A stretch of DNA of 64,000 bases. It comes from Octopus sinensis (lineage: Eukaryota). The notes under the pieces are model-generated. The model made no database searches, was not told the origin of the DNA, and saw only the letters and a list, made by a program, of their open reading frames with translations. The stretch spans positions 36,394,001 through 36,458,000 of the forward strand of contig NC_043004.1 in the NCBI RefSeq assembly GCF_006345805.1, given 5' to 3'. This document shows, piece after piece, positions 1,807 through 60,970 of the stretch. How positions within the stretch are numbered: the first letter of the stretch is position 1; each line of letters starts with the position of its first letter. A program made the translations under genes and the position numbers.

Positions 1807-2757
1807 CCTTGGCAGATCCAAAGACACCGTCCTGGACTACTACAACAACTTTCGCCTGAACATTTTGTTGGGTTATAAAATGCCAGGCTGTAGAGAAACA
1901 TATACCATTTCAGCTGATCTTTTTCATGCTTATGACCAAGCCGATGAAGTCTACAGACAGTTGCTCACCAAGTCAAGGTTCCCAGCTGGTCTTGAGTGGA
2001 TGCCATCAATTACAACATCAGTCTTGGAGCAGGCGGATCTTAAAGCGACTAGAGGAGTTGGATCAGCTTCAAGACGGTGAAAGTCAATTTCTGGAGCTGA
2101 AGAAAGGAAAGATCATCAACCAGATACCATCTATAACTAAGAAACAATTGAAAGGACGAGAAAGATGCTTGATTCGTCATGAGAGAAACCTCCTCCATCT
2201 CGGCTCCCAACCACGAGTTTGCAGCTTGATTTGCTGCGGATAAGTGAAACCTGTCTCAAGCTAATTCAAGGCTTGGGAACATAGTTTCTTTATCTCTCTT
2301 GTTCTCTGAAGTCTCTATAACCACAATGAAGAACTTTCAGAGAAAGACAGCAGTTTCCTACGAAAGTACCTTAAAACCTGAATAACAAAGTCTCGAACGG
2401 GCTAAACACAAACTGAGGCCCCATTAGAAATCAGAAAGTAACATTCATGATGTCTAGTAAAAGAGAAATGCTGAAATATCGAAAGATTTGTAAATCAAGA
2501 GTCTCCCATGAAGGTATCGAGGTCAGGACAAAAATAAATTGGATGGAAGCTGAGACCATGGATGTTATGGAGTTGTTGTAGGTGAGATACGCGGTGCAGG
2601 TTAACGGAGCGCTCTGCGAAGGACCAGTTTAGTTAGCAACAAAATAACCTTGCTATGACAAGGCTCAATGCAAGATGAAGAATTTCCTGACCAAAACAGC
2701 CATCGGTGAAGAACAAGCAGGAGAGTTGGAATGCAGTCTCACTCTTTACGAACATAC

Positions 2758-2800
<43 letters not shown>

Positions 2801-2803
2801 TAA
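1807..2803 (+). mobile_element. Scrambled, decayed RTE-type LINE insertion ending in (CA)n, bounded by a 28-bp direct repeat
   Basis: Exact direct repeat attaagaagcaccgaacaagcaccgtgt at 1779-1806 and 2804-2831. TSVLEQADL and VGMQSHSLRTY resemble RTE ORF C-terminal motifs; (CA)n at 2760-2798. Clade assignment is by eye. Confidence 0.5.
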
Positions 2804-2831
2804 ATTAAGAAGCACCGAACAAGCACCGTGT

Positions 2832-3300
2832 ATCTATAAAACAGCCTTCCTAGAACAAAATCATCTAAATTGTAACCAGCATGGCTTTCATTGCGGGAGG
2901 GACAGACTAGTACGGCTCCTCCACCACTTTGATGATATCTTAAATGCTCTGAGTGAGAGCTCCAACGCGGATGTCATATACTTTGATTTCAACAAGACCT
3001 TTGACACAGTCGACCACAATATACGGTCAAGGAAACTATCCAAAGCTGGAGTCGGTGGAAAGCTACTTCAATGGATTAGGTATTTCCTAACAAACAGGAC
3101 CCAGCATGTTGTAATTGATGGCATCCAATCAAGACCAGCAAAAGTCATCTGTGGAGTCCCGCAGGGTACTGTGCTGGGTCCAGTTTTTTTTATTGTCTGT
3201 ATTAATTGCATTGCAGATTCCATTGAACATAGCGCCATTAAACTATTTGCAGACGACTCTAAGATCCAGAAAGTCATTAAGAGAGCATAAGATTGAACAA
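2832..3300 (+). mobile_element. CR1-group LINE reverse transcriptase core fragment (pseudogenic)
   Basis: ORF 2706..3290 gives QHGF...DVIYFDFNKTFDTVDH...GVPQGTVLGPVFF...LFADDSK, i.e. RT motifs 2-5 in CR1/L2/Jockey-type wording. Confidence 0.88.
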
Positions 3301-8335: not shown

Positions 8336-9122
8336 ACGTTTGACTTTTGCTTTGTATTTGTACAAGTTGACTCCAAATCACACCCAGAGACCTCAAGAGA
8401 CAACAAGTTAGAAGTCCCTGTTGGTGTTATGACTCGGGTGCATATATTTGGTTTTGTACAAAGTATGGTTCTAGAAAATGTTTAAGAAAACGTAAGACAA
8501 TTCTGAGTTTGTTTTAAATTTTGAGATTACATATACGGCATTTTACGTTGGATATGGCCAGTTCCCATGAGTACTATCTTTTTAAGTTTTGCCGGTTTTG
8601 GGTTACCTGGTACCTGAGCTAGGTAGCAATCAGCCCTTTTCCCTATCATTCCTAGGGCACTTGTGACAACAGGTATTGATTTAGTCTTGAGGTTCCACAT
8701 TGTGCCAATTTTTATTTCAGGATCTTTATGCTTGGTCAGGTTTTGGTAGATCTTGACAAATACATTTATGTCGACTGGGACAATCATATCAATGAGGAGG
8801 CATGATTTTTGTCCGAAATCCTTCAATATAATGCCTGGCCTATTCACATCTATCTTTCTATCGGTTTGAACGGTGAAGTTCCAGAGGAGTGAGATGTGGT
8901 CGTTTTCAAGCACAGGAGGTGGTATGTGTTCCTACCATTTTTATCATGGGGCAGTTCTAAGTTTTAGACATCGCCCAGTGAATATACTGTGCTACTCTAT
9001 CATGCCTGATGAGATACTCTGCAGATGCACATGGGAGACATGAACGATGGTTTCATTTTCTTGTTTACATACACATGTTGGGCTACCGCCGTTCTTTAAT
9101 ATGTTGGCCTGGTAGCTCCTTG
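8336..9122 (-). mobile_element. R4/Dong-type non-LTR retrotransposon 3' fragment (CCHC remnant + restriction-like endonuclease)
   Basis: ORF 8527..8913: LWNFTVQTDRKIDVNRPGII...LLID..VP...IPVVTSALG...KIVLMGTGHI; RHDRVAQYIHW upstream; (AAT)n tail at 8321-8335. Confidence 0.85.
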
Positions 9123-13504: not shown

Positions 13505-13773
13505 GGAGGCGCAATGGCCCAGTGGTTAGGGCAGCGAACTTGCGGTTGTAGGATCGCGGTTTCGATTCCCAGGCCGGGCGTTGTAAGTATTTATTGAGCG
13601 AAAACACCTAAAGCAGGGGTTGGTGGCGGTCCACAACTTTCTCTCACTTTTCTTCTGTTGGCCTGCTCGCTTAGCCAGTGGGGTGGCGTCACTTGCAGGC
13701 TAAAACACAATGCAAAGCGCATTGTGACCAGCGATGTGTAGCAACATTTGATAGCCTGGTAGGTCACCGTGAT
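13505..13773 (+). mobile_element. tRNA-derived SINE family B, tail variant 1
   Basis: Head GGCGCAATGGCCCAGTGGTTAGG (A box)...GGTTTCGATTCCC (B box); body ttattgagcgaaaacacctaaagc; tail ...gcgcattgtgaccagcgatgtgtagcaac...; embedded in TA/TG repeats. Confidence 0.8.
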
Positions 13774-30964: not shown

Positions 30965-31033
30965 TCACGTGTAGTTTGGATAACAATCTTGTATGTATTC
31001 CAAGGCTACGTCGTGACAGAATCGAAACTGCTC
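30965..31033 (-). CDS. Receptor-type PTP terminal coding exon (EQFRFCHDVALEYIQDCYPNYT*)
   Basis: Strong acceptor (tttttttttcttttttcag|GAG) at 31033, 69 nt to TGA at 30965-30967. Phase 0 matches the 52875 donor. Sequence parallels the PTP last-exon motif (E/D)QY(K/R)FCYEVALEYL. Pairing across a 21.8-kb intron is inferred; no closer candidate was seen. Confidence 0.88.
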   Translation of the reverse strand, partial: EQFRFCHDVALEYIQDCYPNYT

Positions 31034-31421: not shown

Positions 31422-31456
<35 letters not shown>

Positions 31457-31457
<1 letters not shown>

Positions 31458-34225
31458 TTACATGCGTATGTATACATAGATATACATACATATAAGTACA
31501 TATATATATTTATAACTATCTATATAAGGTCATCCACGTAATAGATCACATCTCGAACATTTAATCACATAATGCTTTTTCTTACACATAGAATATAGAT
31601 GCATAAAATCACAGATGAAACATAATTCATTAATACAAGCATACAAGAGAACTGTGTGAGTATAGTCTATCGCAATTAAAAATTAATACTTTAGCGACTA
31701 AAAAATATATATATTTTAACATTATAACATCTAGAATAAATATGTAAAAATATATATATAAATAGGAAACATAAATATATATAAGGTAAGATAAAAGTTC
31801 ATCGTTCAGAAATTTTTTCGATTAAAAATTACTTTTTAAGATAAGGGAAAACCCATTATGAAAAGCCAGCGTCCAAGCAAAAAAGAAGAAACCATATTTA
31901 CATTCCTATGGCCATTTCAGGGGTTCATTACCGTATTTAGTGCACGAGGGTGCATCACGATAATTACTCCTACATCGGGGGAAAAATAAAAAAAACATCA
32001 CATACCAGGGCGAGATTTCTTTAACCAAACCTGATGCAATATTGCATGGTTACTTATTTAAGAAATCATGCTCAGACCAGCCCAAATATTCAAAAATTAC
32101 TTAAAAGAAAAGGAAGAAATTATCAACTATATAATGGCTGTATTAAATTAAATTCAACCACGATGGTTTAAATTCCCTGTAAGAACTAAGGATTTAATTA
32201 CAACTTTTTATTCCGACAGAATTTTAAGGTGGACGAAAATTTATGGCTGCAAAAAGTATTAATTATATATAAATATACATATATACACACATATACACAT
32301 ATACATATACACATACATACACACATATATATATATATGCATATATATACATGTATATATATATATGTGTATATATGTATATATATATATGTGTATATAT
32401 GTATATATATGTGTATATATGTTTATATATATGTGTATATATACATACATACATACATACATAGACACACACACACACAAATATACACACATACACACAC
32501 ATATACATATATATATATATACACACATATATATATACACATATATACATACACATATATATATACACATATATACATACACATATATATACATTTTTAT
32601 ACATACATATATATAGCAAAAATTTAGATTCAAATGAATATGGTACTTAATTTAGATGCACCAGAATTCTGTATGGTGTTATCCATAAAAATCCGTGGGG
32701 TGATTATAATCAAAATAAGCAACACGAATGACTCCGGTAATTTGGAGTCATTCTTGTTGCTTATTTTGATGACATATATATATATATACATACATATTTA
32801 TACACACACATATATATATGTGTGTATATATATATATATAATATATATATATATATATACTTACATGCGTATGTATACATAGATATACATACATATAAGT
32901 ACATATATATATTTATAACTATCTATATAAGGTCATCCACGTAATAGATCACATCTCGAACATTTAATCACATAATGCTTTTTCTTACACATAGAATATA
33001 GATGCATAAAATCACAGATGAAACATAATTCATTAATACAAGCATACAAGAGAACTGTGTGAGTATAGTCTATCGCAATTAAAAATTAATACTTTAGCGA
33101 CTAAAAAATATATATATTTTAACATTATAACATCTAGAATAAATATGTAAAAATATATATATAAATAGGAAACATAAATATATATAAGGTAAGATAAAAG
33201 TTCATCGTTCAGAAATTTTTTCGATTAAAAATTACTTTTTAAGATAAGGGAAAACCCATTATGAAAAGCCAGCGTCCAAGCAAAAAAGAAGAAACCATAT
33301 TTACATTCCCTATGGCCATTTCAGGGGTTCATTACCGTATTTAGTGCACGAGGGTGCATCACGATAATTACTCCTACATCGGGGGAAAAATAAAAAAAAC
33401 ATCACATACCAGGGCGAGATTTCTTTAACCAAACCTGATGCAATATTGCATGGTTACTTATTTAAGAAATCATGCTCAGACCAGCCCAAATATTCAAAAA
33501 TTACTTAAAAGAAAAGGAAGAAATTATCAACTATATAAATGGCTGTATTAAATTAAATTCAACCACGATGGTTTAAATTCCCTGTAAGAACTAAAGGATT
33601 TAATTACAACTTTTTATTCCGACAGAATTTTAAGGTGGACGAAAATTTATGGCTGCAAAAAGTATTAATTATATATAAATATACATATATACACACATAT
33701 ACACATATACATATACACATACATACACACATATATATATATATGCATATATATACATGTATATATATATGTGTATATATGTATATATATGTGTGTATAT
33801 ATGTTTATATATATGTGTATATATGTTTATATATATGTGTATATATACATACATACATACATACATAGACACACACACACACAAATATACACACATACAC
33901 ACACATATACATATATATATATACACATATATATATATACACATATATATATACACATATATACATACACATATATATACATTTTTATACATACATATAT
34001 ATAGCAAAAATTTAGATTCAAATGAATATGGTACTTAATTTAGATGCACCAGAATTCTGTATGGTGTTATCCATAAAAATCCGTGGGGTGATTATAATCA
34101 AAATAAGCAACACGAATGACTCCGGTAATTTGGAGTCATTCTTGTTGCTTATTTTGATGACATATATATATATATATACATACATATTTATACACACACA
34201 TATATATATGTGTGTGTGTGTGTAT
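31457..34225. repeat. Tandem duplication, period about 1403 bp (31457-32859 and 32860-about 34225)
   Basis: cttacatgcgtatgtatacatag at 31457 and 32860; colinear unique sequence; duplicated ORFs 32229/33635 and 32634/34022. Confidence 0.95.
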
Positions 34226-36039: not shown

Positions 36040-36610
36040 TCTTCTCATGCATATATCTGCATATCTAGACATGCTCGTATATATTTAAATGCTAAACGTC
36101 TGGAAAGTTCTACAGATTTTTATTGTTCCAGTGATGGATTGGATCTGTAGTCTTTGAATTAGCTTTCGCCTTTCTGGTTTTGAAAAGCCTAAGTTCTCAT
36201 GATTGGTATTTAGGCAGTGTGTTACACATCCCAGGGCCCCAATAATTACAGGTATAAACCTGAACTTCTAATCTGGACAGAGTAACAACAGATTTCTCAA
36301 TAGTTCAGTGTAGGTATTCTCTTTTATACTGATCTTCAGCTTTATGTTAACATCTGCCGGTCAGCTGATTTCCACAACAGTGCACATTTTCTCTTCTCCA
36401 TCCCAAAACATATCAGGTCTGTTGTGCCTACATTTTACTGGGGTTTTCACTGGGACATTCCACCACACTCCTTGTTATAGGTGGCTATGGCTTCTACCAT
36501 AATGCGGGTTCTTATTTCTTTGTCCTCGAGGTTATCCTTCCGACGGACTTCATAATAGAGTTTCGTAGCTACAACATCATGTCTCATCGGTAGTCCCACA
36601 CATCGTGGTC
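36040..36610 (-). mobile_element. R4/Dong-type LINE 3' fragment (RLE domain)
   Basis: My minus-strand translation: RHDVVATKLYYEVRRKD...WWNVPVKTPVKCRHNRPD...VVEIS..ADVN...FIPVIIGALGCVT...QSITGTIKICRTF. Not in the ORF track because of stops and frameshifts. Confidence 0.75.
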
Positions 36611-38346
36611 ATTTGTAGTGTATGAATTAAGGAGTTGCGTTCTCTTCCCAAGAACCTAAATTCAACCTTACTTCAGACGAATTGGTATGTATTCTCTTGT
36701 ATATATGTATGTATGCCTTTTTGTATGTATGTTCCAAATTATAATTCAACGCCTTCCCTATCATTTTGAAACCATCATTAACACAGTTATTTATTTATTC
36801 AGTAAGAATACTTTAAATCAATGAATGAAGCATCATTACTGTGTTCCTATTTTCACTATTGTATTAGTATCACTATTGTATTACTATTACTGTACGCTTA
36901 TTATGATTGTACTTATATTGCACACAGATCGGTGGTTTCGTATTTTGTAACAAGTGGTATATCTTGCCTTGACTAATGCTTTTATCTCTCTTCAATAAAA
37001 CCCTCAAACTACGAACTTCTAACTCCCTGTCAAACATACTCTTCCAACCACCTGTATTCATCTTCCCCGAGAGTCAGATCCTATAATCCAAACAAATTAT
37101 TTTTGCCTTCCATCGTTTCTTATTCCAAGCGATCCTCTCCTCTAGCACCAAACTATGTATATTTCCTTTTTTTTTCCTTTGCCACAGGCATCAGAAGATT
37201 TGAAAGGAACAATACTTTTACAAAGCTCAATTAACTCCACTGGTATCTGGATAGGAAAGAAATGGTCGACTGGAGACTTTATTTAAACATTCATCTTATA
37301 TTTATTGAGTTCAAATTTACTGCACGTATTTTGGTGTGAATGTCAGTGGACTTAATGGTACATGTCTTCCATCTCCTTCTAGAAAGACGGTAATATCAGA
37401 ACAGACACATAAACATCATAGCGAACGGAAGATTTATATTTCATTCATTTCATGGAATTAAGCTTAAACTTGGAAGTTATCCTTATAACTCGTCGATTTA
37501 TTTATATGTTTAGTTTCTGAAAAAGGGGGAAAAACACATAGACAAGATGAAATTAATTCTCATTGCCTCCACAGTAAAATATCTCTATTTCATTATATTG
37601 GAAGAATATTTCTGAAGATAGAAGACACAATAAGTCTCATAATAATTTGGAATGCTAAGCAGCAAATTTCTACAGTGTCTCTTGAGCAGGATGCTCACCT
37701 CTCTTCAACCTAAGCTCTAGAGACTCTTGCGTCAAGCTGTAAGCTCGACGAACCATGTTCTTTATTTATGATGTGTTCCCCACACGATTGTAATAGTGCA
37801 AGAGGCAATATACGGAATAATCGAAGTATTAACACTCCATCTTCTTGAACCAACAGCAATTCGATAATATGTCCCTTAGACAATTTTTATTGAAATCAAA
37901 GCCTAACATTCCTTTACTGTTAGTCTCAGCTTTAAAAAGAATTCATAAGAAAAATTTTACAAAATAGGGTTTCAGAAATTTAGGTTTTAAATTGACTTAG
38001 AGGTTTGATACTTCTCATTCAGAATATTCAGCGACCCGGTTTTCGGCGATGGCAATAGTATTAATAACAACCAATTAGTAATAATTAATACTTCTAGAAA
38101 TATTACTGAGGTTTTAATCTGTTATAATCTGTCATTTCCTTGAACCAACAATTCTGTCACATACGTACATACATGTATGCATAAACAATCACACGCACAA
38201 AATTCCTTGCCAGAATTAAACCACCATTTACAGATTATAATAAACAAGACTTTCATTCTAAAATGTATTCTCACGTTAGAGACAGTCTTGTGTACAAGAC
38301 AAGACTATTTACTCTTAAACATATATATATATATATTCTTCTCTTT

Positions 38347-38724
38347 CACTCCGTCGGTTGCGACGATGAGGGTCCCAGCTGATACGATCAACGGAACAGC
38401 TTGCTCGTGATATTAACGTGCAAGTGGCTGAGCACTCCACAGACACGTGTACCCTTAACGTAGTTCTCGAGGAGATTCAGCGAGACACACAGAATGTGAC
38501 AAGGCTGGCCCTTTGAAATACAGGTACAAGAGAAACAGGAAGAAAGAGCGAGAGAAAGTTGTGGTGAAAGAATACAGCAGGGTTCACCACCACCCACTGC
38601 CGGAGCCTCGTGGAGCTTTAGGTGTTTTCGCTCAATAAACACTCACAATGCCCGGTCTGGGAATCGAAACCGCGATCCTCCGACCGCGAGTCCGCTGCCC
38701 TAACCACTGGGCCATTGCACCTCC
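38347..38724 (-). mobile_element. tRNA-derived SINE family B, tail variant 2
   Basis: Same head and ttattgagcgaaaacacctaaagc body as 13505-13773 on the minus strand, but a different 3' half (gagaactacgttaagggtacacgtgtctgtggagtgctcagccacttgcacg...gacggagtg). Confidence 0.82.
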
Positions 38725-38789
38725 TCCTATATATATATATATCGGAAATATACCTAAGTAAAAAAGGGAAAAAAATTCTTTCGTGCAAA

Positions 38790-39345
38790 TCTGACCCTGA
38801 TACATACGATACAGCTAAGGGTCAGACCCGATTCTGATTGGTCAACAAGTTGATGACGTCTAGCTCAGCTAGAATGGACAGGATACAAACAGGGGACAGT
38901 CATTAGTCAGAATATTGATGACGTCCTTTTCTGCTTGAATAGTCACCTAACAAGTACAGACAGGAGGCAGATCTAATGTAGCTATAAGTCGTGATTGGGC
39001 AGAATCTGCATGACGTCCCGTTCTGCTTGACTAACGAAGCGACTGGTCAGGACAGGAAACAAACAAGAGGCAGTTATAATGCAGCGATTGGTCAAAATAA
39101 TGATGACGTCCCGTTCTACTTGACTAACGAAGCGACTGGTCAAAACAGGAAAACAAACAAGAGTCAGTTATAATGCAGCGATTGGTCAAAATAATGATGA
39201 CGTCCCGTTCTACTTGACTAAAGCCACCTAACGAAACGATTGGTCAAAACGTTGATGACGTCACGCTACGCTAAATTGACCACCTAACAGGCATTATAAA
39301 ACCGAGCACTTCACAAAAACTCATTAGAACCACCCAGCGAACATC
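38790..39345 (+). promoter_or_regulatory. Candidate Pol II promoter/enhancer: six inverted-CCAAT + CRE modules, TATA box, Inr-like site
   Basis: ATTGG at 38837, 38902 (ATTAG variant), 38994, 39087, 39181 and 39239, each followed after exactly 12 nt by TGACGTC (38854, 38919, 39011, 39104, 39198, 39256; the last is a full TGACGTCA). TATAAAA at 39295-39301; TCATTA at 39321-39326. Activity is inferred. Confidence 0.6.
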
Positions 39346-39741
39346 CACCATGGGTCATCACATTTGCTTAAGGTAAAAATGAATTCCTCGCTCTTTCGGA
39401 AACATCAATCTTCTGTATTGACCGCTTTCCACCACTTTGATCTGTTTTTTGTATTGAATACGTATCGCCACCGTGGGCCACTGCATCGAACACTTTGAAC
39501 ATATACTTCAAACTATATATCAACTATACATGAACTATATATCAACTATACATGAACTCTAAGATGTCTGACTCCGTTGTGTATTATAAATGAATTTCTT
39601 GTGTTTGACGGCATGAGCTGTCTTTTTTTATATATAACTTTTTTTGATAAAGTTCATTTCAGGAACTGAAACATGTTATAATGTATATATATAAAAATTA
39701 AAAATTGTATAATACAGCAGCATTTTCGAACTTCATTTTTT

Positions 39742-39783
<42 letters not shown>

Positions 39784-40052
39784 ATGGTATTATTAAAATA
39801 CCATCACAAGTGGTAAGCGAATTATTAGCCGTACAGGCTAATTTATAAAATATATACATATAATATTAGATATGTACATATATACACAAGGGTACTACAT
39901 GAGTACCTATATCGCTAATGCTTGAAGTTAAAAAATACTCCTGTACCACCGAATAGTCACAAATCCATTACAGACAAGATAGGAAAAAATATCAGTGAAC
40001 AATAATAATGTCTTACCTCGAACGGGTCAGAACAAGTATATATATATATACA

Positions 40053-42063: not shown

Positions 42064-43321
42064 AATGGATTGGCCAAAAAGTCGTTCGGTTTTTATTGAC
42101 ACTAAACTTGAAGCACTCTAATTCGTAGCTATCTTCAGTCTGTCCCTTGTGCATGGGCACTCGTTAGATACTTCTCATTTCAACGAAGTTCGATGCGAAC
42201 TTGCATCGAGAGAGGTTGCAGTCTGTGTGCTTGAGATCACACTGAATATGGAGAACCAAAATGTACATTATCGATACCTCATGCGTTCTTTAATTTTTAA
42301 AAATACATGAAAGCAGCGGATAAATGCAGGGAAATATGTACTGCATATGGAGAGGATGCTGTTACGAAACATGTGTGCTAGAAATGGTTTACAAAACTTC
42401 GATCAAGGTATTTTTCGGTTTAAGATGCACCTCTCTCTCCTTGGCTGGCCAACTGAGATTAACAGCAATGAAACGAAAGATGTGGTCGGCAGCTACCCTC
42501 AGTATACAACCAGGATGATCACAGATATTCTCAAAATCGAATGCATCAACTTGACTACGTCAGGAGGTTCGATGCTTGTGTCCCACATCAATGAGACTAA
42601 CCTCGACCAGAAGATTTCCATCTGCGATTCCTTGCAAGAAGGTGAAAAAGATGATCCTTCTTTGAAGAGAATGGTTACAGGGGAAGGGGGAATGTATCGT
42701 CTATAACAATGTGAAATATAAACGATTTTGGGAAAGTGCGGTGAACTACCACAAACAACTTCCAAGTTACAGACAAATAAGTCAACACCAGTTGATTATG
42801 CTTTCAATTTGGTGAGAGTGGAAGAGTGTTGTCTTTTACGGTCTTCTTCTTAAACACAGGACCATCAATTCGGATGCGTATTGTAACCAGTTAGACAAAC
42901 GAAACGCTGAAGTCTGCCTGAAGCGTCAAGTATTTGCTCATCATAAGGATATTGTCTTTCATTTCGACAATGCCAGACTGCACAATTCTTTGAATACGCG
43001 GCAGAAGTTACAGGGGCTTGACTGGGAAGTTTTGAAGGACTCTCTGCATTTATCCGACCTTGCACCTTCAGATTTCCACCTGTTTCGGATTCCTCAAAAT
43101 TCATTGAACGAACAGACCTTAAACTCTGAAGAGGGTGTAAAAATTCACCTAGGAGGGATTTTCGCCAGTAAAAACGGAGAACTTTTTTGAACAGTGAATA
43201 ACGGATCTGCCCACAATGTAGCAGAAAACACTGGAACGAAACAGTAATTATATCATTGTGTTTAAAGGTTGAGTCTTATTTTCGCTTAAAAGACTGAATA
43301 GACGATTTGGCCAACCCAATA
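42064..43321 (+). mobile_element. Near full-length decayed mariner DNA transposon (cecropia/mellifera-like TIR)
   Basis: TIRs ggattggccaaaaagtcg / cgatttggccaacccaata. Transposase remnants LVSHINETNLDQKISICDSL..DDPSLKRMVTGE (WVPHEL...TGDEKW equivalent), FHFDNARLH, TRQKLQGLDWEVL..SDLAPSDFHLFR..QNSL. Confidence 0.9.
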
Positions 43322-44110: not shown

Positions 44111-44680
44111 CTATTTCTTTACTACCCACAAGGGGCTAAACACAGAGGGGACAGACAAAGGGATTAAGTCGATTACATTGACCCCAGTGCGTAACTGGAA
44201 CTTAATTTATCGGCCCCGAAAGGATGAAAGGCAAAGTCGACCTCGGCGGAATTTGAACTCAGAACATAATGGCAAGCGAAATACCTATTTCTTTACTACC
44301 CACAAGGGGCTAAAAACAGAGAGGACAAACAAACGGATTAACTCGATTACATCGACCCCAGTGCGTAACTGGTACTTAATTTATCGACCCCGAAAGGATG
44401 AAAGGCAAAGTCGACCTCGGCGGAATTTGAACTCAGAACATAATGGCAAGCGAAATACCTATTTCTTTACTACCCACAAGGGGCTAAAAACAGAGAGGAC
44501 AAACAAACGGATTAACTCGATTACATCGACCCCAGTGCGTAACTGGTACTTAATTTATCGACCCCGAAAGGATGAAAGGCAAAGTCGACCTCGGCGGAAT
44601 TTGAACTCAGAACGTAAAAACAGATGAAATACTGCTAAGCATTTTGCCCGGCGGGCAAACGTTTCTGCCAGCTCGCCGCC
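44111..44680 (-). mobile_element. tRNA-derived SINE family C, head-to-tail trimer with a 174-bp period
   Basis: Head GGCGGCGAGCTGGCAGAAACG at 44680; the unit beginning ctatttctttactacccacaagggg recurs at 44111, 44285 and 44459. Explains repetitive ORF 44178..44627. Confidence 0.88.
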
Positions 44681-52874: not shown

Positions 52875-53010
52875 ATAATTGTCTACAAGTTGGGACCGAT
52901 TCAGTCTAAGTTGTTTCACCGCCTGGAAGACGTCTACTTCTTTTTCAGCATTAATTCTCTCCAGTACACAACTTATAGCGCAGTACAGTCCACTTCTGCT
53001 AGCACCATTC
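52875..53010 (-). CDS. Receptor-type PTP D2 domain, internal exon (G+NGASRSGLYCAISCVLERINAEKEVDVFQAVKQLRLNRSQLVDNY)
   Basis: Acceptor ttacttgtag|GAAT at 53010, donor AATTAT|gtaagt at 52875; 136 nt. Joins the previous exon in frame to give HCMNGASRSG and contains the PTP motif VDVFQAVKQLRxxR. Lies within listed ORF 52809..53072. Confidence 0.95.
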
Positions 53011-59734: not shown

Positions 59735-60970
59735 CTACACATGAGTCCTAGAAACACTAACCTTGAACAAGGTAGCAGCAGAAATCATAAAATATATAGA
59801 ATATTCCATGAATAAATGGCAGACAGTGATACAGCTCCAGACAAAAGAGGGACTCATTAAAACCAAAGCCATCCCCATTAGAAGAGGAATATTCCAGGGA
59901 GACACGCTCCTTCCATTCCTTTTCTGCATGGCATTGACACTATATCTGACATGCTACGCAGAACTGGATGTGGATACGACTCTTTTCAGTCTTTAAGGAA
60001 GCTGACAAATACAAAAACAAAGTAATAGTACCTAACAACTATAAAGAAAACGAAGAAACAACAAAACCTATAAAGCAACTGAAATCCAAACTTAAAATGG
60101 AACAGCAACGGATCATGATAAAACGATGGCAAAAAAGCCCCTTAATGGAGAATACTGGACTAAACTAAACAGAAAAGAAATAGACAAAGCAAAATCCCAA
60201 CAATGCCAAAGAAGCTCAGGACTCAAAGCAGAGACTGAAGGATTTTTAATTGCAGTACAAGACCAAAGCCTTCCCACCAGAAATTACCAAAAACATGTAA
60301 TGAAAGGAAATATAAATAACTGCAGAATATGTAGAGATGGACAAGAAACAATAAACCATACTGTCTCTGGCTGCCCAGTCCTGGCTAAGAAGGAACATAT
60401 TCACAGAGACACGACAGAGTTGGGACCTACATACACTGGAAGTTATGTCAACACTATGGAATAACAACCAGAAAAAGATTGTATAGGCACACGCCAGAAA
60501 ATGTCACAGAAAAAGAGAAAGCAACAATACTATGTGATATGCCACTACACACAGATATAGAAATTAAGGCCAATAGGCTGGATATAGTTGTCAGAGATCG
60601 CCAAGAAAAAATGCTTTCTAATGTATCAATGCCAACATATGACAATATTTCTCTAAAAGAAACGGAGAAAACTTTCAAAATACAAAGATCTCGAAATAGA
60701 GGTAACTCGAATGCAGATCCTAAAAACAGAAACAGTTCCTATCATAGTAGGTGCATTAGGCATGATAAAAAAATATTCAGACAAATACATAACAAAAACA
60801 CCAGGACTTACAAACACATATAACATACAGAAAATTGCACTACTAGGTACCGCACCCATCCTACGTAAAACACTTTCAATACAGTGAAAATAAGAGCAGC
60901 CCAACAAACCACAGCACATACCCAAGGCACATAGAGCCGAACCGGTAGTGCAGTCAAAGCACGTGGTAAA
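59735..60970 (+). mobile_element. R4/Dong-type LINE, 5'-truncated with an internal deletion after RT motif 4
   Basis: RRGIFQGDTLLPFLFC (RT), SSGLKAETEGFLIAVQDQSLPTRNY..CRIC..GQETINHTVSGC (CCHC), TDIEIKANRLDIVV..VPIIVGALG..QKIALLGTAPILRK (RLE). Confidence 0.88.

What the first reader, a model, noticed from the sequence alone, without database searches (positions are those of the whole stretch)
38790..39345. Six inverted-CCAAT + CRE modules at invariant 12-nt spacing ahead of a TATA box, antisense within the PTP intron
Seen: ATTGG-N12-TGACGTC occurs six times (starts 38837, 38902, 38994, 39087, 39181, 39239). Inter-module periods vary (65, 92, 93, 94, 58 bp) and spacer sequences diverge, yet the two motifs and their spacing are kept, apart from one ATTAG variant. 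The last module has a full palindromic TGACGTCA. Downstream are TATAAAA (39295) and TCATTA with its A 28 nt from the TATA. The left edge is a 9-bp inverted repeat (tctgaccct 38790-38798 / agggtcaga 38818-38826). Known: CCAAT binds NF-Y and TGACGTCA binds CREB/ATF bZIP factors. This geometry is not the ERSE (CCAAT-N9-CCACG). Reiterated CRE/CCAAT enhancers before a TATA are typical of viral and LTR U3 regions. Inference: a strong, signal-inducible promoter, either from an unrecognised mobile or viral element or a host promoter built by tandem amplification, driving transcription antisense to the PTP gene.
Basis: partly seen in the sequence, partly recalled or inferred. Interest (0 to 1): 0.8.

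Follow-up and report, generated by a model that had tools for sequence, protein, structure and literature searches.

The report
Tandem CCAAT/CRE promoter-like array in intron
Inside the last intron of a tyrosine-phosphatase gene, on the opposite strand, a short DNA unit carrying two classic transcription-factor sites has been copied six times in front of a TATA box and what looks like a small first exon; it is most likely an unannotated promoter grown by local duplication, and nothing ties it to a virus or mobile element.

Summary
There are six ATTGG-N12-TGACGTC modules (one is ATTAG), and they hold all six TGACGTC strings of the 64-kb window. Downstream lie TATAAAA (39295), TCATTA (A at 39323), an ATG with purine at -3 and G at +4 (39350), and an AAG|GT donor (after 39372).

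The array is a tandem repeat. Units 3-5 are recent copies (86-99% identical), so there are about four independent lineages. Among the five distinct units, 11 of 12 motif columns are invariant, against 4 of 12 spacer columns and 8 of 39 other columns. The motifs and their distance are therefore kept better than the rest. The 9-bp inverted repeat at the left edge is at chance level.

The array lies antisense in the 21.8-kb last intron of the PTP gene. I found no LTR ends or target duplication, no second copy in the window, no retroelement or viral reading frames nearby, no viral-contig relative, no Rfam hit and no unusual RNA fold. I also found no recognisable downstream coding exon.

Best reading (about 0.45): a TATA-type Pol II promoter built by local tandem duplication, driving an unannotated antisense transcript. 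Genomic copy number, transcription and inducibility could not be tested, because the source genome is not in any collection on hand.

The parts
38837..38860 (+). Module U1: ATTGG, 12-nt spacer (TCAACAAGTTGA), TGACGTC. The ATTGG is 486 nt upstream of the predicted start.
38902..38925 (+). Module U2: variant ATTAG (CCAAT box broken), 12-nt spacer, TGACGTC.
38994..39017 (+). Module U3: ATTGG, spacer GCAGAATCTGCA, TGACGTC. The spacer differs from U4 at 6 of 12 positions, although the rest of the unit is 86% identical to U4.
39087..39110 (+). Module U4: ATTGG, spacer TCAAAATAATGA, TGACGTC.
39181..39204 (+). Module U5: identical to U4, a recent duplicate.
39239..39263 (+). Module U6, the proximal one: ATTGG at -84 and the only full palindromic TGACGTCA, at -67 from the predicted start.
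39010..39221 (+). Young core of the array: a 94-bp tandem unit, 2.3 copies, 95% matches. The unit itself shows a weaker 46-bp sub-period.
39295..39301 (+). TATA box (TATAAAA), 32 nt after the end of the last CRE.
39321..39326 (+). Initiator-like TCATTA. The predicted start is the A at 39323, 28 nt after the first T of the TATA box.
39323..39372 (+). Putative first exon (inferred). It has a 27-nt leader and an ATG at 39350 with A at -3 and G at +4, followed by seven and two-thirds codons. It ends at AAG, and the GT donor is at 39373-39374. Unspliced, the reading frame stops after 8 codons.
   Evidence: no transcript data available
38790..38826 (.). 9-bp inverted repeat with a 19-nt loop at the left edge. 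It is real but at chance level, so it is not treated as an element boundary.
38337..38727 (-). Neighbour: a tRNA-derived SINE, with its head towards the array, flanked by (TA)n on both sides. A second partial copy lies at 13505-13659. It is a separate insertion, not part of the array.
52875..53010 (-). Host gene: penultimate coding exon of the PTP (catalytic-loop region). It is bounded by an AG acceptor and a GTAAGT donor.
30965..31033 (-). Host gene: last coding exon of the PTP. It follows a polypyrimidine tract and AG, joins the previous exon in phase 0, ends in a stop codon, and AATAAA follows 10 nt later. The intron 31034-52874 (21.8 kb) contains the array.

Best explanation
This is a TATA-type RNA polymerase II promoter with a short first exon. 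It lies antisense in the last intron of a protein tyrosine phosphatase gene. Its upstream region grew by local tandem duplication of a unit of about 46/93 bp.

Shown: each unit carries an inverted CCAAT box and, 12 nt further on, a CRE-type TGACGTC site. Five of the six CCAAT boxes have flanks of the kind NF-Y is known to prefer (my own knowledge of the NF-Y site). The six copies run from -486 to -84 relative to the predicted start at 39323. The duplication history is visible in the sequence, and the motifs and their distance are conserved better than the spacer and the flanks.

Inferred:
- NF-Y and an ATF/CREB-family bZIP factor bind side by side in each module. The CRE lies within the 25-28 bp of DNA that NF-Y contacts.
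- The reiteration multiplies the promoter's output or its response to cAMP or stress signalling.
- Transcription starts near 39323, and the transcript is spliced from the donor after 39372.

The product is unknown. It is most likely an unannotated non-coding or small-ORF transcript antisense to the PTP gene.
For: - Six modules, holding every TGACGTC of the window, all in one orientation.
- Tandem structure with copies of different ages.
- Motif columns 11/12 invariant, against 4/12 spacer and 8/39 other columns. Fisher p = 2e-5, with the columns chosen after the fact. The longest invariant run is 8 columns, permutation p = 0.0055.
- Even between the young units U3 and U4 (68/79 identical elsewhere), the spacer differs at 6/12 positions while motifs and length are kept.
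- The proximal module sits at -84/-67 and the TATA box at -28.
- TATA + initiator-like site + first ATG with purine at -3 and G at +4 + donor before the stop occurs once in the window, against 0.02 expected.
- The array is not a coding repeat: unit lengths are not multiples of three, and Pfam finds nothing.
- It is not a structured RNA.
- Literature: NF-Y contacts 25-28 bp, interacts directly with bZIP factors (ATF2, ATF3, ATF6, c-Jun), and works at fixed distances from partner sites in ER-stress and MHC class II promoters (PMC4889920, PMC3730095).
Against: - There are no transcript, chromatin or comparative data. The source genome and its relatives are absent from every collection I could query.
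- No recognisable coding exon lies downstream on the + strand in the intron, among stop-free stretches of 33 aa or more.
- The donor lacks the usual G at +5, and unspliced the reading frame is only 8 codons.
- TATA plus initiator-like pairs are common in this AT-rich window (23).
- Only about four module lineages are independent. The column statistics were computed on motifs chosen because they stood out.
- CpG content gives no promoter signal, because the whole window is barely CpG-depleted (o/e 0.85).
Confidence: 0.45

Rival explanations
1. The promoter belongs to a mobile element: a solo LTR or the promoter-bearing end of another retroelement or transposon. Its internal enhancer repeats expanded, as happens in LTR U3 regions. 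It would be active or formerly active, but not a host gene promoter.
For: Reiterated enhancer units directly upstream of a TATA box are typical of LTR U3 regions. The ERV-9/LTR12 repeats with CCAAT and GATA sites are an example (PMC3730095). The intron is full of repeats: a SINE 110 bp away, a mariner remnant at 42.3-43.2 kb, and retroelement-like fragments elsewhere. No host exon is found downstream.
Against: No TG..CA ends with a target duplication of 5 bp or more exist for any start in 38700-38845 and end in 39300-39900. The only two 4-bp matches start inside the SINE. There is no second copy of the array or of its flanks in 64 kb. No gag, pol, RT, integrase or other Pfam family turns up in stop-free stretches of 40 aa or more on the + strand at 35.3-39.4 kb or the - strand at 35.3-46 kb, nor of 33 aa or more on the + strand at 39.4-53 kb. 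In viral contigs the module pattern gives only single matches per contig, and the one inspected lies in coding sequence.
Confidence: 0.2
2. It is a neutral intronic minisatellite. The founding unit happened to contain a CCAAT pentamer and a CRE-like heptamer. The TATA, ATG and GT strings downstream are coincidences of AT-rich sequence, and nothing is transcribed from here.
For: Three of the six modules are recent copies, so both the motif count and the invariant spacing are largely inherited. TATA-like strings (1902 on both strands) and TATA plus initiator-like pairs (23) abound in the window. No downstream gene is found. The left-edge inverted repeat is at chance level.
Against: Among the five distinct units the two motifs are nearly invariant, while the 12-nt spacer and the flanks are 60-80% variable. 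The run of 8 invariant columns has permutation p = 0.0055. The full downstream set of TATA, initiator-like site, good-context first ATG and donor is expected 0.02 times per window. It lies in the right orientation and at the right distance from the array.
Confidence: 0.2
3. The array is an orientation-independent intronic enhancer, or a signal-responsive element, of the host PTP gene or of a neighbouring gene. It is not a promoter of its own, and the downstream core-promoter look-alikes are irrelevant.
For: Clusters of NF-Y and CRE sites also occur in enhancers (PMC3730095). The array lies inside the transcription unit of the PTP gene. No target exon is found on the + strand.
Against: The proximal module, TATA box and initiator-like site have promoter geometry. 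From my own knowledge, CRE sites act mostly close to TATA boxes. Enhancers commonly produce some transcripts too, so this rival overlaps with the best explanation.
Confidence: 0.1

Closest known systems
ERV-9/LTR12 U3 enhancer repeats (primate endogenous retrovirus LTR; tandem units with CCAAT and GATA sites bound by NF-Y)
   Same: A short unit carrying a CCAAT box plus a second factor site is reiterated head to tail, up to 14 times, directly upstream of a promoter. NF-Y is the presumed anchor (PMC3730095, citing Yu 2005 and Pi 2010).
   Different: LTR12 is a defined LTR present in many genomic copies. Here no LTR ends, target duplication, second copy or internal genes were found. The partner site here is a CRE, not GATA. 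The host is a mollusc, not a primate.
ER-stress response elements (ERSE and ERSE-II): NF-Y plus ATF6 at a fixed distance
   Same: A CCAAT box and a bZIP site lie at a fixed short distance, so the bZIP factor binds next to NF-Y (PMC3730095 and PMC4889920, citing Yoshida 2000). In ERSE-II, as here, the bZIP site lies 3' of the inverted CCAAT box (my own knowledge).
   Different: The bZIP site here is TGACGTC(A/C/T), not the ERSE half-site. The gap is 12 nt, not 9 or 1. No ERSE-type half-site occurs in any module. The 11-nt difference from ERSE-II is about one helical turn; I note that as an observation and do not treat it as evidence.
MHC class II X2-Y promoter module and the fibronectin CRE/CCAAT pair
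   Same: A CRE-like site and an NF-Y (inverted CCAAT) site cooperate at a conserved distance. ATF-2 and CCAAT-binding proteins cooperate in the fibronectin promoter (PMC4889920, citing Alonso 1996; PMC3730095).
   Different: Those are single modules, not arrays. In MHC class II the CRE-like box lies 5' of the inverted CCAAT box and needs an adjacent RFX site. Here the order within the module is the reverse, and no third conserved box was identified.
Tandem promoter duplications in Aspergillus fumigatus cyp51A (TR34/TR46), which duplicate sites for a sterol-regulatory factor and the CCAAT-binding complex
   Same: Local tandem duplication of a promoter segment that carries transcription-factor sites, changing promoter output (PMC4954732, PMC9239056).
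   Different: Fungal, two copies only, different factor pair, and experimentally documented. Here output has not been measured.
Viral enhancers with reiterated CRE sites (for example the Tax-responsive repeats of a human T-cell leukaemia virus LTR and the repeats of a cytomegalovirus immediate-early enhancer; named from my own knowledge)
   Same: Several CRE-type sites are reiterated upstream of a TATA box.
   Different: There is no fixed-distance CCAAT partner in those enhancers. There are no viral genes near this array and no related array in viral contigs.

Membership tests
TATA-type RNA polymerase II core promoter | TATA box about 25-31 nt upstream of the start site | tested here: met
   TATAAAA at 39295-39301. 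The A of TCATTA (39323) lies 28 nt after its first T.
TATA-type RNA polymerase II core promoter | Initiator at the start site | tested here: inconclusive
   TCATTA fits the initiator core, but 23 TATA plus initiator-like pairs occur in this AT-rich window.
TATA-type RNA polymerase II core promoter | Capped transcripts starting there | not testable with these tools
   No transcript or chromatin data are on hand. The source genome is absent from the collections.
NF-Y / bZIP composite element at fixed distance (kind of element, not a named family) | CCAAT box and bZIP site at one invariant distance in independent copies | tested here: inconclusive
   The gap is 12 nt in 6 of 6 modules, with 11/12 motif columns against 4/12 spacer columns invariant. 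All copies descend from one unit, so they are not independent. The genome-wide spacing preference could not be tested.
ERSE / ERSE-II | CCAAT box 9 nt (ERSE) or 1 nt (ERSE-II) from the ATF6 half-site | tested here: not met
   The gap is 12 nt and the site is TGACGTC. No ERSE half-site occurs in any module.
MHC class II S-X-Y module | RFX site, then CRE-like X2 box, then inverted CCAAT (Y) box in that order at conserved distances | tested here: not met
   The order within the module is inverted CCAAT then CRE. The next ATTGG follows each CRE at variable distances of 34-70 nt.
LTR of a retroelement (solo or proviral) | TG..CA termini flanked by a 4-6 bp target-site duplication | tested here: not met
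   There is no pair with a duplication of 5 bp or more. The two 4-bp chance-level pairs both start inside the neighbouring SINE.
LTR of a retroelement (solo or proviral) | Second LTR, primer-binding site and gag/pol genes alongside (proviral form) | tested here: not met
   There is no second copy in 64 kb. No Pfam family is found in stop-free stretches on either strand around the array. The primer-binding site was not searched for.
LTR of a retroelement (solo or proviral) | Many dispersed genomic copies with the same ends | not testable with these tools
   No cephalopod genome is on hand. Exact look-ups of four window reading frames found nothing on record.
Minisatellite / tandem repeat | Head-to-tail copies of a 10-100 bp unit | tested here: met
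   TRF finds a 94-bp unit, 2.3 copies, 95% matches. Six copies of the 41-nt core lie at 65-94 and 58 nt spacing.
Viral enhancer or endogenous viral element | Related sequence in viral genomes, or viral genes adjacent | tested here: not met
   Viral contigs gave one single match to the 19-base module pattern, inside coding sequence. The looser 14-base pattern gave only single matches per contig among the rows listed. There are no viral protein families nearby.
Structured RNA gene or coding repeat | Rfam match or unusually stable fold; or a reading frame kept across units | tested here: not met
   No Rfam hit. Folding z-scores are -1.2 and -0.5. Unit lengths of 65, 92, 93, 94 and 58 nt break any frame, and Pfam finds nothing.

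The most novel reading that the evidence does not exclude
ATTGG-N12-TGACGTC is a true fixed-geometry composite element in cephalopods. NF-Y would recruit or stabilise a CREB/ATF-family factor one helical turn further out than in the vertebrate ERSE-II. This locus would be a recently amplified six-fold version that gives a lineage-specific antisense or nested transcript strong cAMP or stress inducibility, possibly regulating the host PTP gene in cis.
Probability: 0.1. Interest if true: 0.55.

Novelty: new member of a known kind. Interest (0 to 1): 0.3.

Why it matters
If transcribed, this is a clean example of a promoter gaining strength by stepwise tandem duplication of a two-site module, caught with copies of several ages in one array. 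It would also add an unannotated antisense transcription unit inside a phosphatase gene. The conserved 12-nt distance between an NF-Y site and a CRE is a testable candidate for a fixed-geometry composite element outside vertebrates. If it is not transcribed, it shows how convincingly a minisatellite in AT-rich DNA can imitate a promoter. Either way the finding is of local interest to annotation rather than a new kind of system.

Tried and rejected
(1) An error of mine. The first collection scans used GATTGGTCA-N7-TGATGACGTC, which corresponds to a 13-nt gap between ATTGG and TGACGTC, one base wider than the window's modules. I found the error.
- The 16 metagenome loci (L003-L018) therefore say nothing about the 12-nt geometry. 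On inspection they are unrelated anyway.
- L006, L007, L009, L010, L014 and L017 are one locus seen in several samples. There the strings look as if they come from repeated Asp-Val codons in coding-like DNA (read by eye).
- L003, L005, L015 and L016 look like bacterial coding sequence.
- L004 and L011 are promoter-like or repeat-like eukaryotic contigs with no similarity beyond the searched pattern.

(2) The correct pattern on viral contigs gave one chance match inside a coding region. The looser GATTGG-N11-ATGACGTC gave only single matches per contig.

(3) Orthologues and copy number could not be obtained.
- A protein search with the PTP exons returned one 58%-identical transcript fragment.
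- Exact look-ups of two array reading frames and two nearby reading frames found nothing on record.
- So the source genome is not in the collection. I ran no further search on array translations.

I did not try it by another route.

(5) The CpG-island test was uninformative. Window-wide CpG o/e is 0.85 and the array's is 0.9-1.0.

(6) Other negatives:
- LTR boundary and target-duplication scan.
- Rfam.
- RNA folding.
- Pfam on flanking stop-free stretches, apart from a mariner remnant.

(7) I considered the left-edge inverted repeat as an element boundary and rejected it as chance.

(8) I considered the CRE array as an upstream element for the adjacent SINE, whose head is 110 bp away on the other strand. 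I left this as speculation. The SINE is a separate insertion flanked by (TA)n.

(9) Literature searches for cephalopod promoter maps found nothing usable.

Full report
THE OBSERVATION. Shuffles of the window give 0.24 matches on average and never six. All six TGACGTC heptamers of the 64-kb window lie in this array. The only full TGACGTCA is the last one, at 39256. TATAAAA is at 39295. TCATTA is at 39321, with its A (39323) 28 nt after the first T of the TATA box. The 9-bp inverted repeat at 38790/38818 exists, but the window holds 51 comparable non-simple inverted repeats, so it carries no weight.

THE ARRAY IS A TANDEM REPEAT WITH COPIES OF DIFFERENT AGES.
- Tandem Repeats Finder reports a 94-bp unit, 2.3 copies, 95% matches, at 39010-39221, with a weaker 46-bp sub-period.
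- The repeat finder places six copies of a 41-nt core at spacings of 65, 92, 93, 94 and 58 nt.
- In the alignment of the six units (A1), U4 and U5 have identical modules and U3 is 86% identical to U4 outside the module. U1, U2 and U6 are 40-60% identical to the others outside the module.
- The count of six therefore reflects about four independent lineages, and the invariant spacing is partly inherited.

Among the five distinct units, 11 of the 12 motif columns are invariant, against 4 of 12 spacer columns and 8 of 39 remaining ungapped columns. Fisher p = 2e-5, with the caveat that the motif columns were picked because they stood out. The longest run of invariant columns is 8 (ATGACGTC), and permuting the columns reaches that in 0.55% of trials. 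Even between the young units U3 and U4 the spacer differs at 6 of 12 positions, while the motifs and the length are unchanged.

WHAT LIES DOWNSTREAM. The first ATG after the predicted start is at 39350. It has A at -3 and G at +4. After 23 nt comes AAG|GTAAAA, whose GT sits one base before an in-frame stop. Unspliced, the reading frame is 8 codons; spliced, this would be a 50-nt first exon.
- TATA-like strings and TATA plus initiator-like pairs are common in this AT-rich window (1902 and 23).
- The whole combination of TATA, initiator-like site at 26-34 nt, first ATG in that context, and a donor before the stop occurs only here.
- It is expected 0.02 times per window under a first-order Markov shuffle. 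This criterion was also built after seeing the case.
- Relative to 39323 the six inverted CCAAT boxes sit at -486, -421, -329, -236, -142 and -84. The palindromic CRE is at -67. From my own knowledge, that is where such sites usually work next to a TATA box.

CONTEXT. The host gene is confirmed.
- A protein search with two minus-strand exons returned a PTP-domain fragment, P0001, at 58% identity.
- Aligning P0001 back to the window locates exons at 53437-53276 and 53010-52875. A last exon lies at 31033-30965, behind a polypyrimidine tract and AG. It joins in phase 0, ends in a stop, and AATAAA follows 10 nt later.
- The array therefore lies in the 21.8-kb last intron, on the opposite strand.
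- Directly to its left is a tRNA-derived SINE (38337-38727, minus strand) flanked by (TA)n on both sides, with a second partial copy at 13505-13659. It is a separate insertion.

IS IT PART OF A MOBILE OR VIRAL ELEMENT? I found no positive sign.
- No second copy of the array or its flanks exists in the window.
- No TG..CA pair with a target duplication of 5 bp or more brackets it.
- Stop-free stretches were scanned against Pfam: 33 aa or more on the + strand at 39.4-53 kb, and 40 aa or more on the + strand at 35.3-39.4 kb and the - strand at 35.3-46 kb. They match nothing except a degenerate mariner transposase 3 kb downstream.
- Viral contigs hold one chance match to the 19-base module pattern, inside coding sequence. 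The looser pattern gives only single matches per contig.
- There is no Rfam family and no unusual RNA fold on either strand.
- The unit lengths break any reading frame, so it is not a coding repeat.

What I could not test is genomic copy number. The source genome and its close relatives are not in any collection on hand. One further limitation is my own doing: my single metagenome scan used a pattern one base too wide, so it does not bear on this geometry. Its hits were unrelated on inspection.

MECHANISM. The best-supported reading is a Pol II promoter whose upstream region was built by local duplication.
- Shown: the duplication history, the better conservation of the two motifs and their distance, and the promoter-like geometry.
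- From the literature: NF-Y contacts 25-28 bp around the CCAAT box, so a site 12 nt away lies at the edge of its footprint. NF-Y interacts directly with bZIP factors such as ATF2, ATF3, ATF6 and c-Jun. It acts at fixed distances from partners in ER-stress and MHC class II promoters (PMC4889920, PMC3730095).
- Inferred: these factors bind here, reiteration raises output or inducibility, and transcription starts at 39323.

No downstream coding exon was recognised, so the likeliest product is a non-coding or small-ORF transcript antisense to the PTP gene. I put this reading at about 0.45. The rivals are a mobile-element promoter (0.2), a neutral minisatellite that only looks like a promoter (0.2), and an intronic enhancer without its own stable transcript (0.1).

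COMPARISON WITH KNOWN SYSTEMS.
- It works like the reiterated CCAAT-containing enhancer units of the ERV-9/LTR12 U3 region, and like fixed-distance NF-Y/bZIP elements such as the ERSE.
- It is not a member of either. The LTR features that could be tested are absent. The ERSE spacing and half-site are not met.
- The MHC class II X2-Y order is the reverse of the one here.
- As an evolutionary process it resembles the tandem promoter duplications of fungal cyp51A (PMC4954732, PMC9239056).

It is a new member of a known kind of thing, of moderate to low interest, unless the 12-nt geometry proves to be a general cephalopod composite element.

Noticed in passing
window 38994-39017 versus 39087-39110: Units U3 and U4 are 86% identical outside the module (68/79), yet their 12-nt spacers differ at 6 of 12 positions. 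The U3 spacer (GCAGAATCTGCA) contains a perfect 5-bp inverted repeat, and so does the U1 spacer (TCAACAAGTTGA), with different letters. This is either a clustered change or a hint of a third, dyad-symmetric site between the two motifs. It remains unexplained.
   Followed up: partly
window 38872-38900, 38955-38975, 39045-39075, 39140-39170: A second recurrent purine-rich block occurs in units U1-U4, of the type GGACAGGA.ACAAACA. Strings of the type CACCTAAC or GACTAACGAAG occur in units U2-U6. They may be further factor sites and were not analysed statistically.
   Followed up: no
window 38337-38727 (minus strand) and 13505-13659: A tRNA-derived SINE of about 390 bp, flanked on both sides by (TA)n (38321-38336 and 38728-42), as if inserted into a TA microsatellite. 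Its head points towards the array, 110 bp away. A second partial copy is 92% identical over 110 nt.
   Followed up: partly
window 42311-43187 (+ strand): A degenerate mariner-type transposase remnant (Pfam Transposase_1, E = 7e-4, below the curated cut-off). Its reading frame is interrupted at least twice.
   Followed up: partly
window 44111-44617: A 174-bp tandem repeat, 2.9 copies, 97% matches. It reads through as one long open frame purely because of the repetition.
   Followed up: partly
window 31438-32134 versus 32841-33538: A tandem segmental duplication with a period of about 1.4 kb and blocks of 230-300 nt at 100% identity, just inside the PTP last intron next to the last exon. It is either a very recent duplication or an assembly artefact.
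   Followed up: partly
window 2691-3287 (+), 8530-8931 (-), 36088-36608 (-), 59745-60884 (+): By eye, several stop-free stretches look like reverse-transcriptase or C-terminal parts of non-LTR retroelement proteins. The stretch at 36088-36608 gave no Pfam match when scanned. None adjoins the array.
   Followed up: no
L004 3008-3125: An unrelated eukaryote-like metagenome contig shows two ATTGG boxes and a palindromic TGACGTCA 13 nt (not 12) after the second, with a TATA-like string about 70 nt downstream. It is a similar promoter layout with a different gap, and it is only an anecdote.
   Followed up: partly
L017 3880-4000 and 1850-1935 (same locus in L006, L007, L009, L010, L014): In coding-like DNA of a host-associated metagenome, clusters of GACGTCA strings appear, by eye, to arise from repeated Asp-Val-Thr/Ile codons. 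CRE-like arrays can thus be by-products of coding repeats. That is not the case in the window, where no frame is kept.
   Followed up: partly
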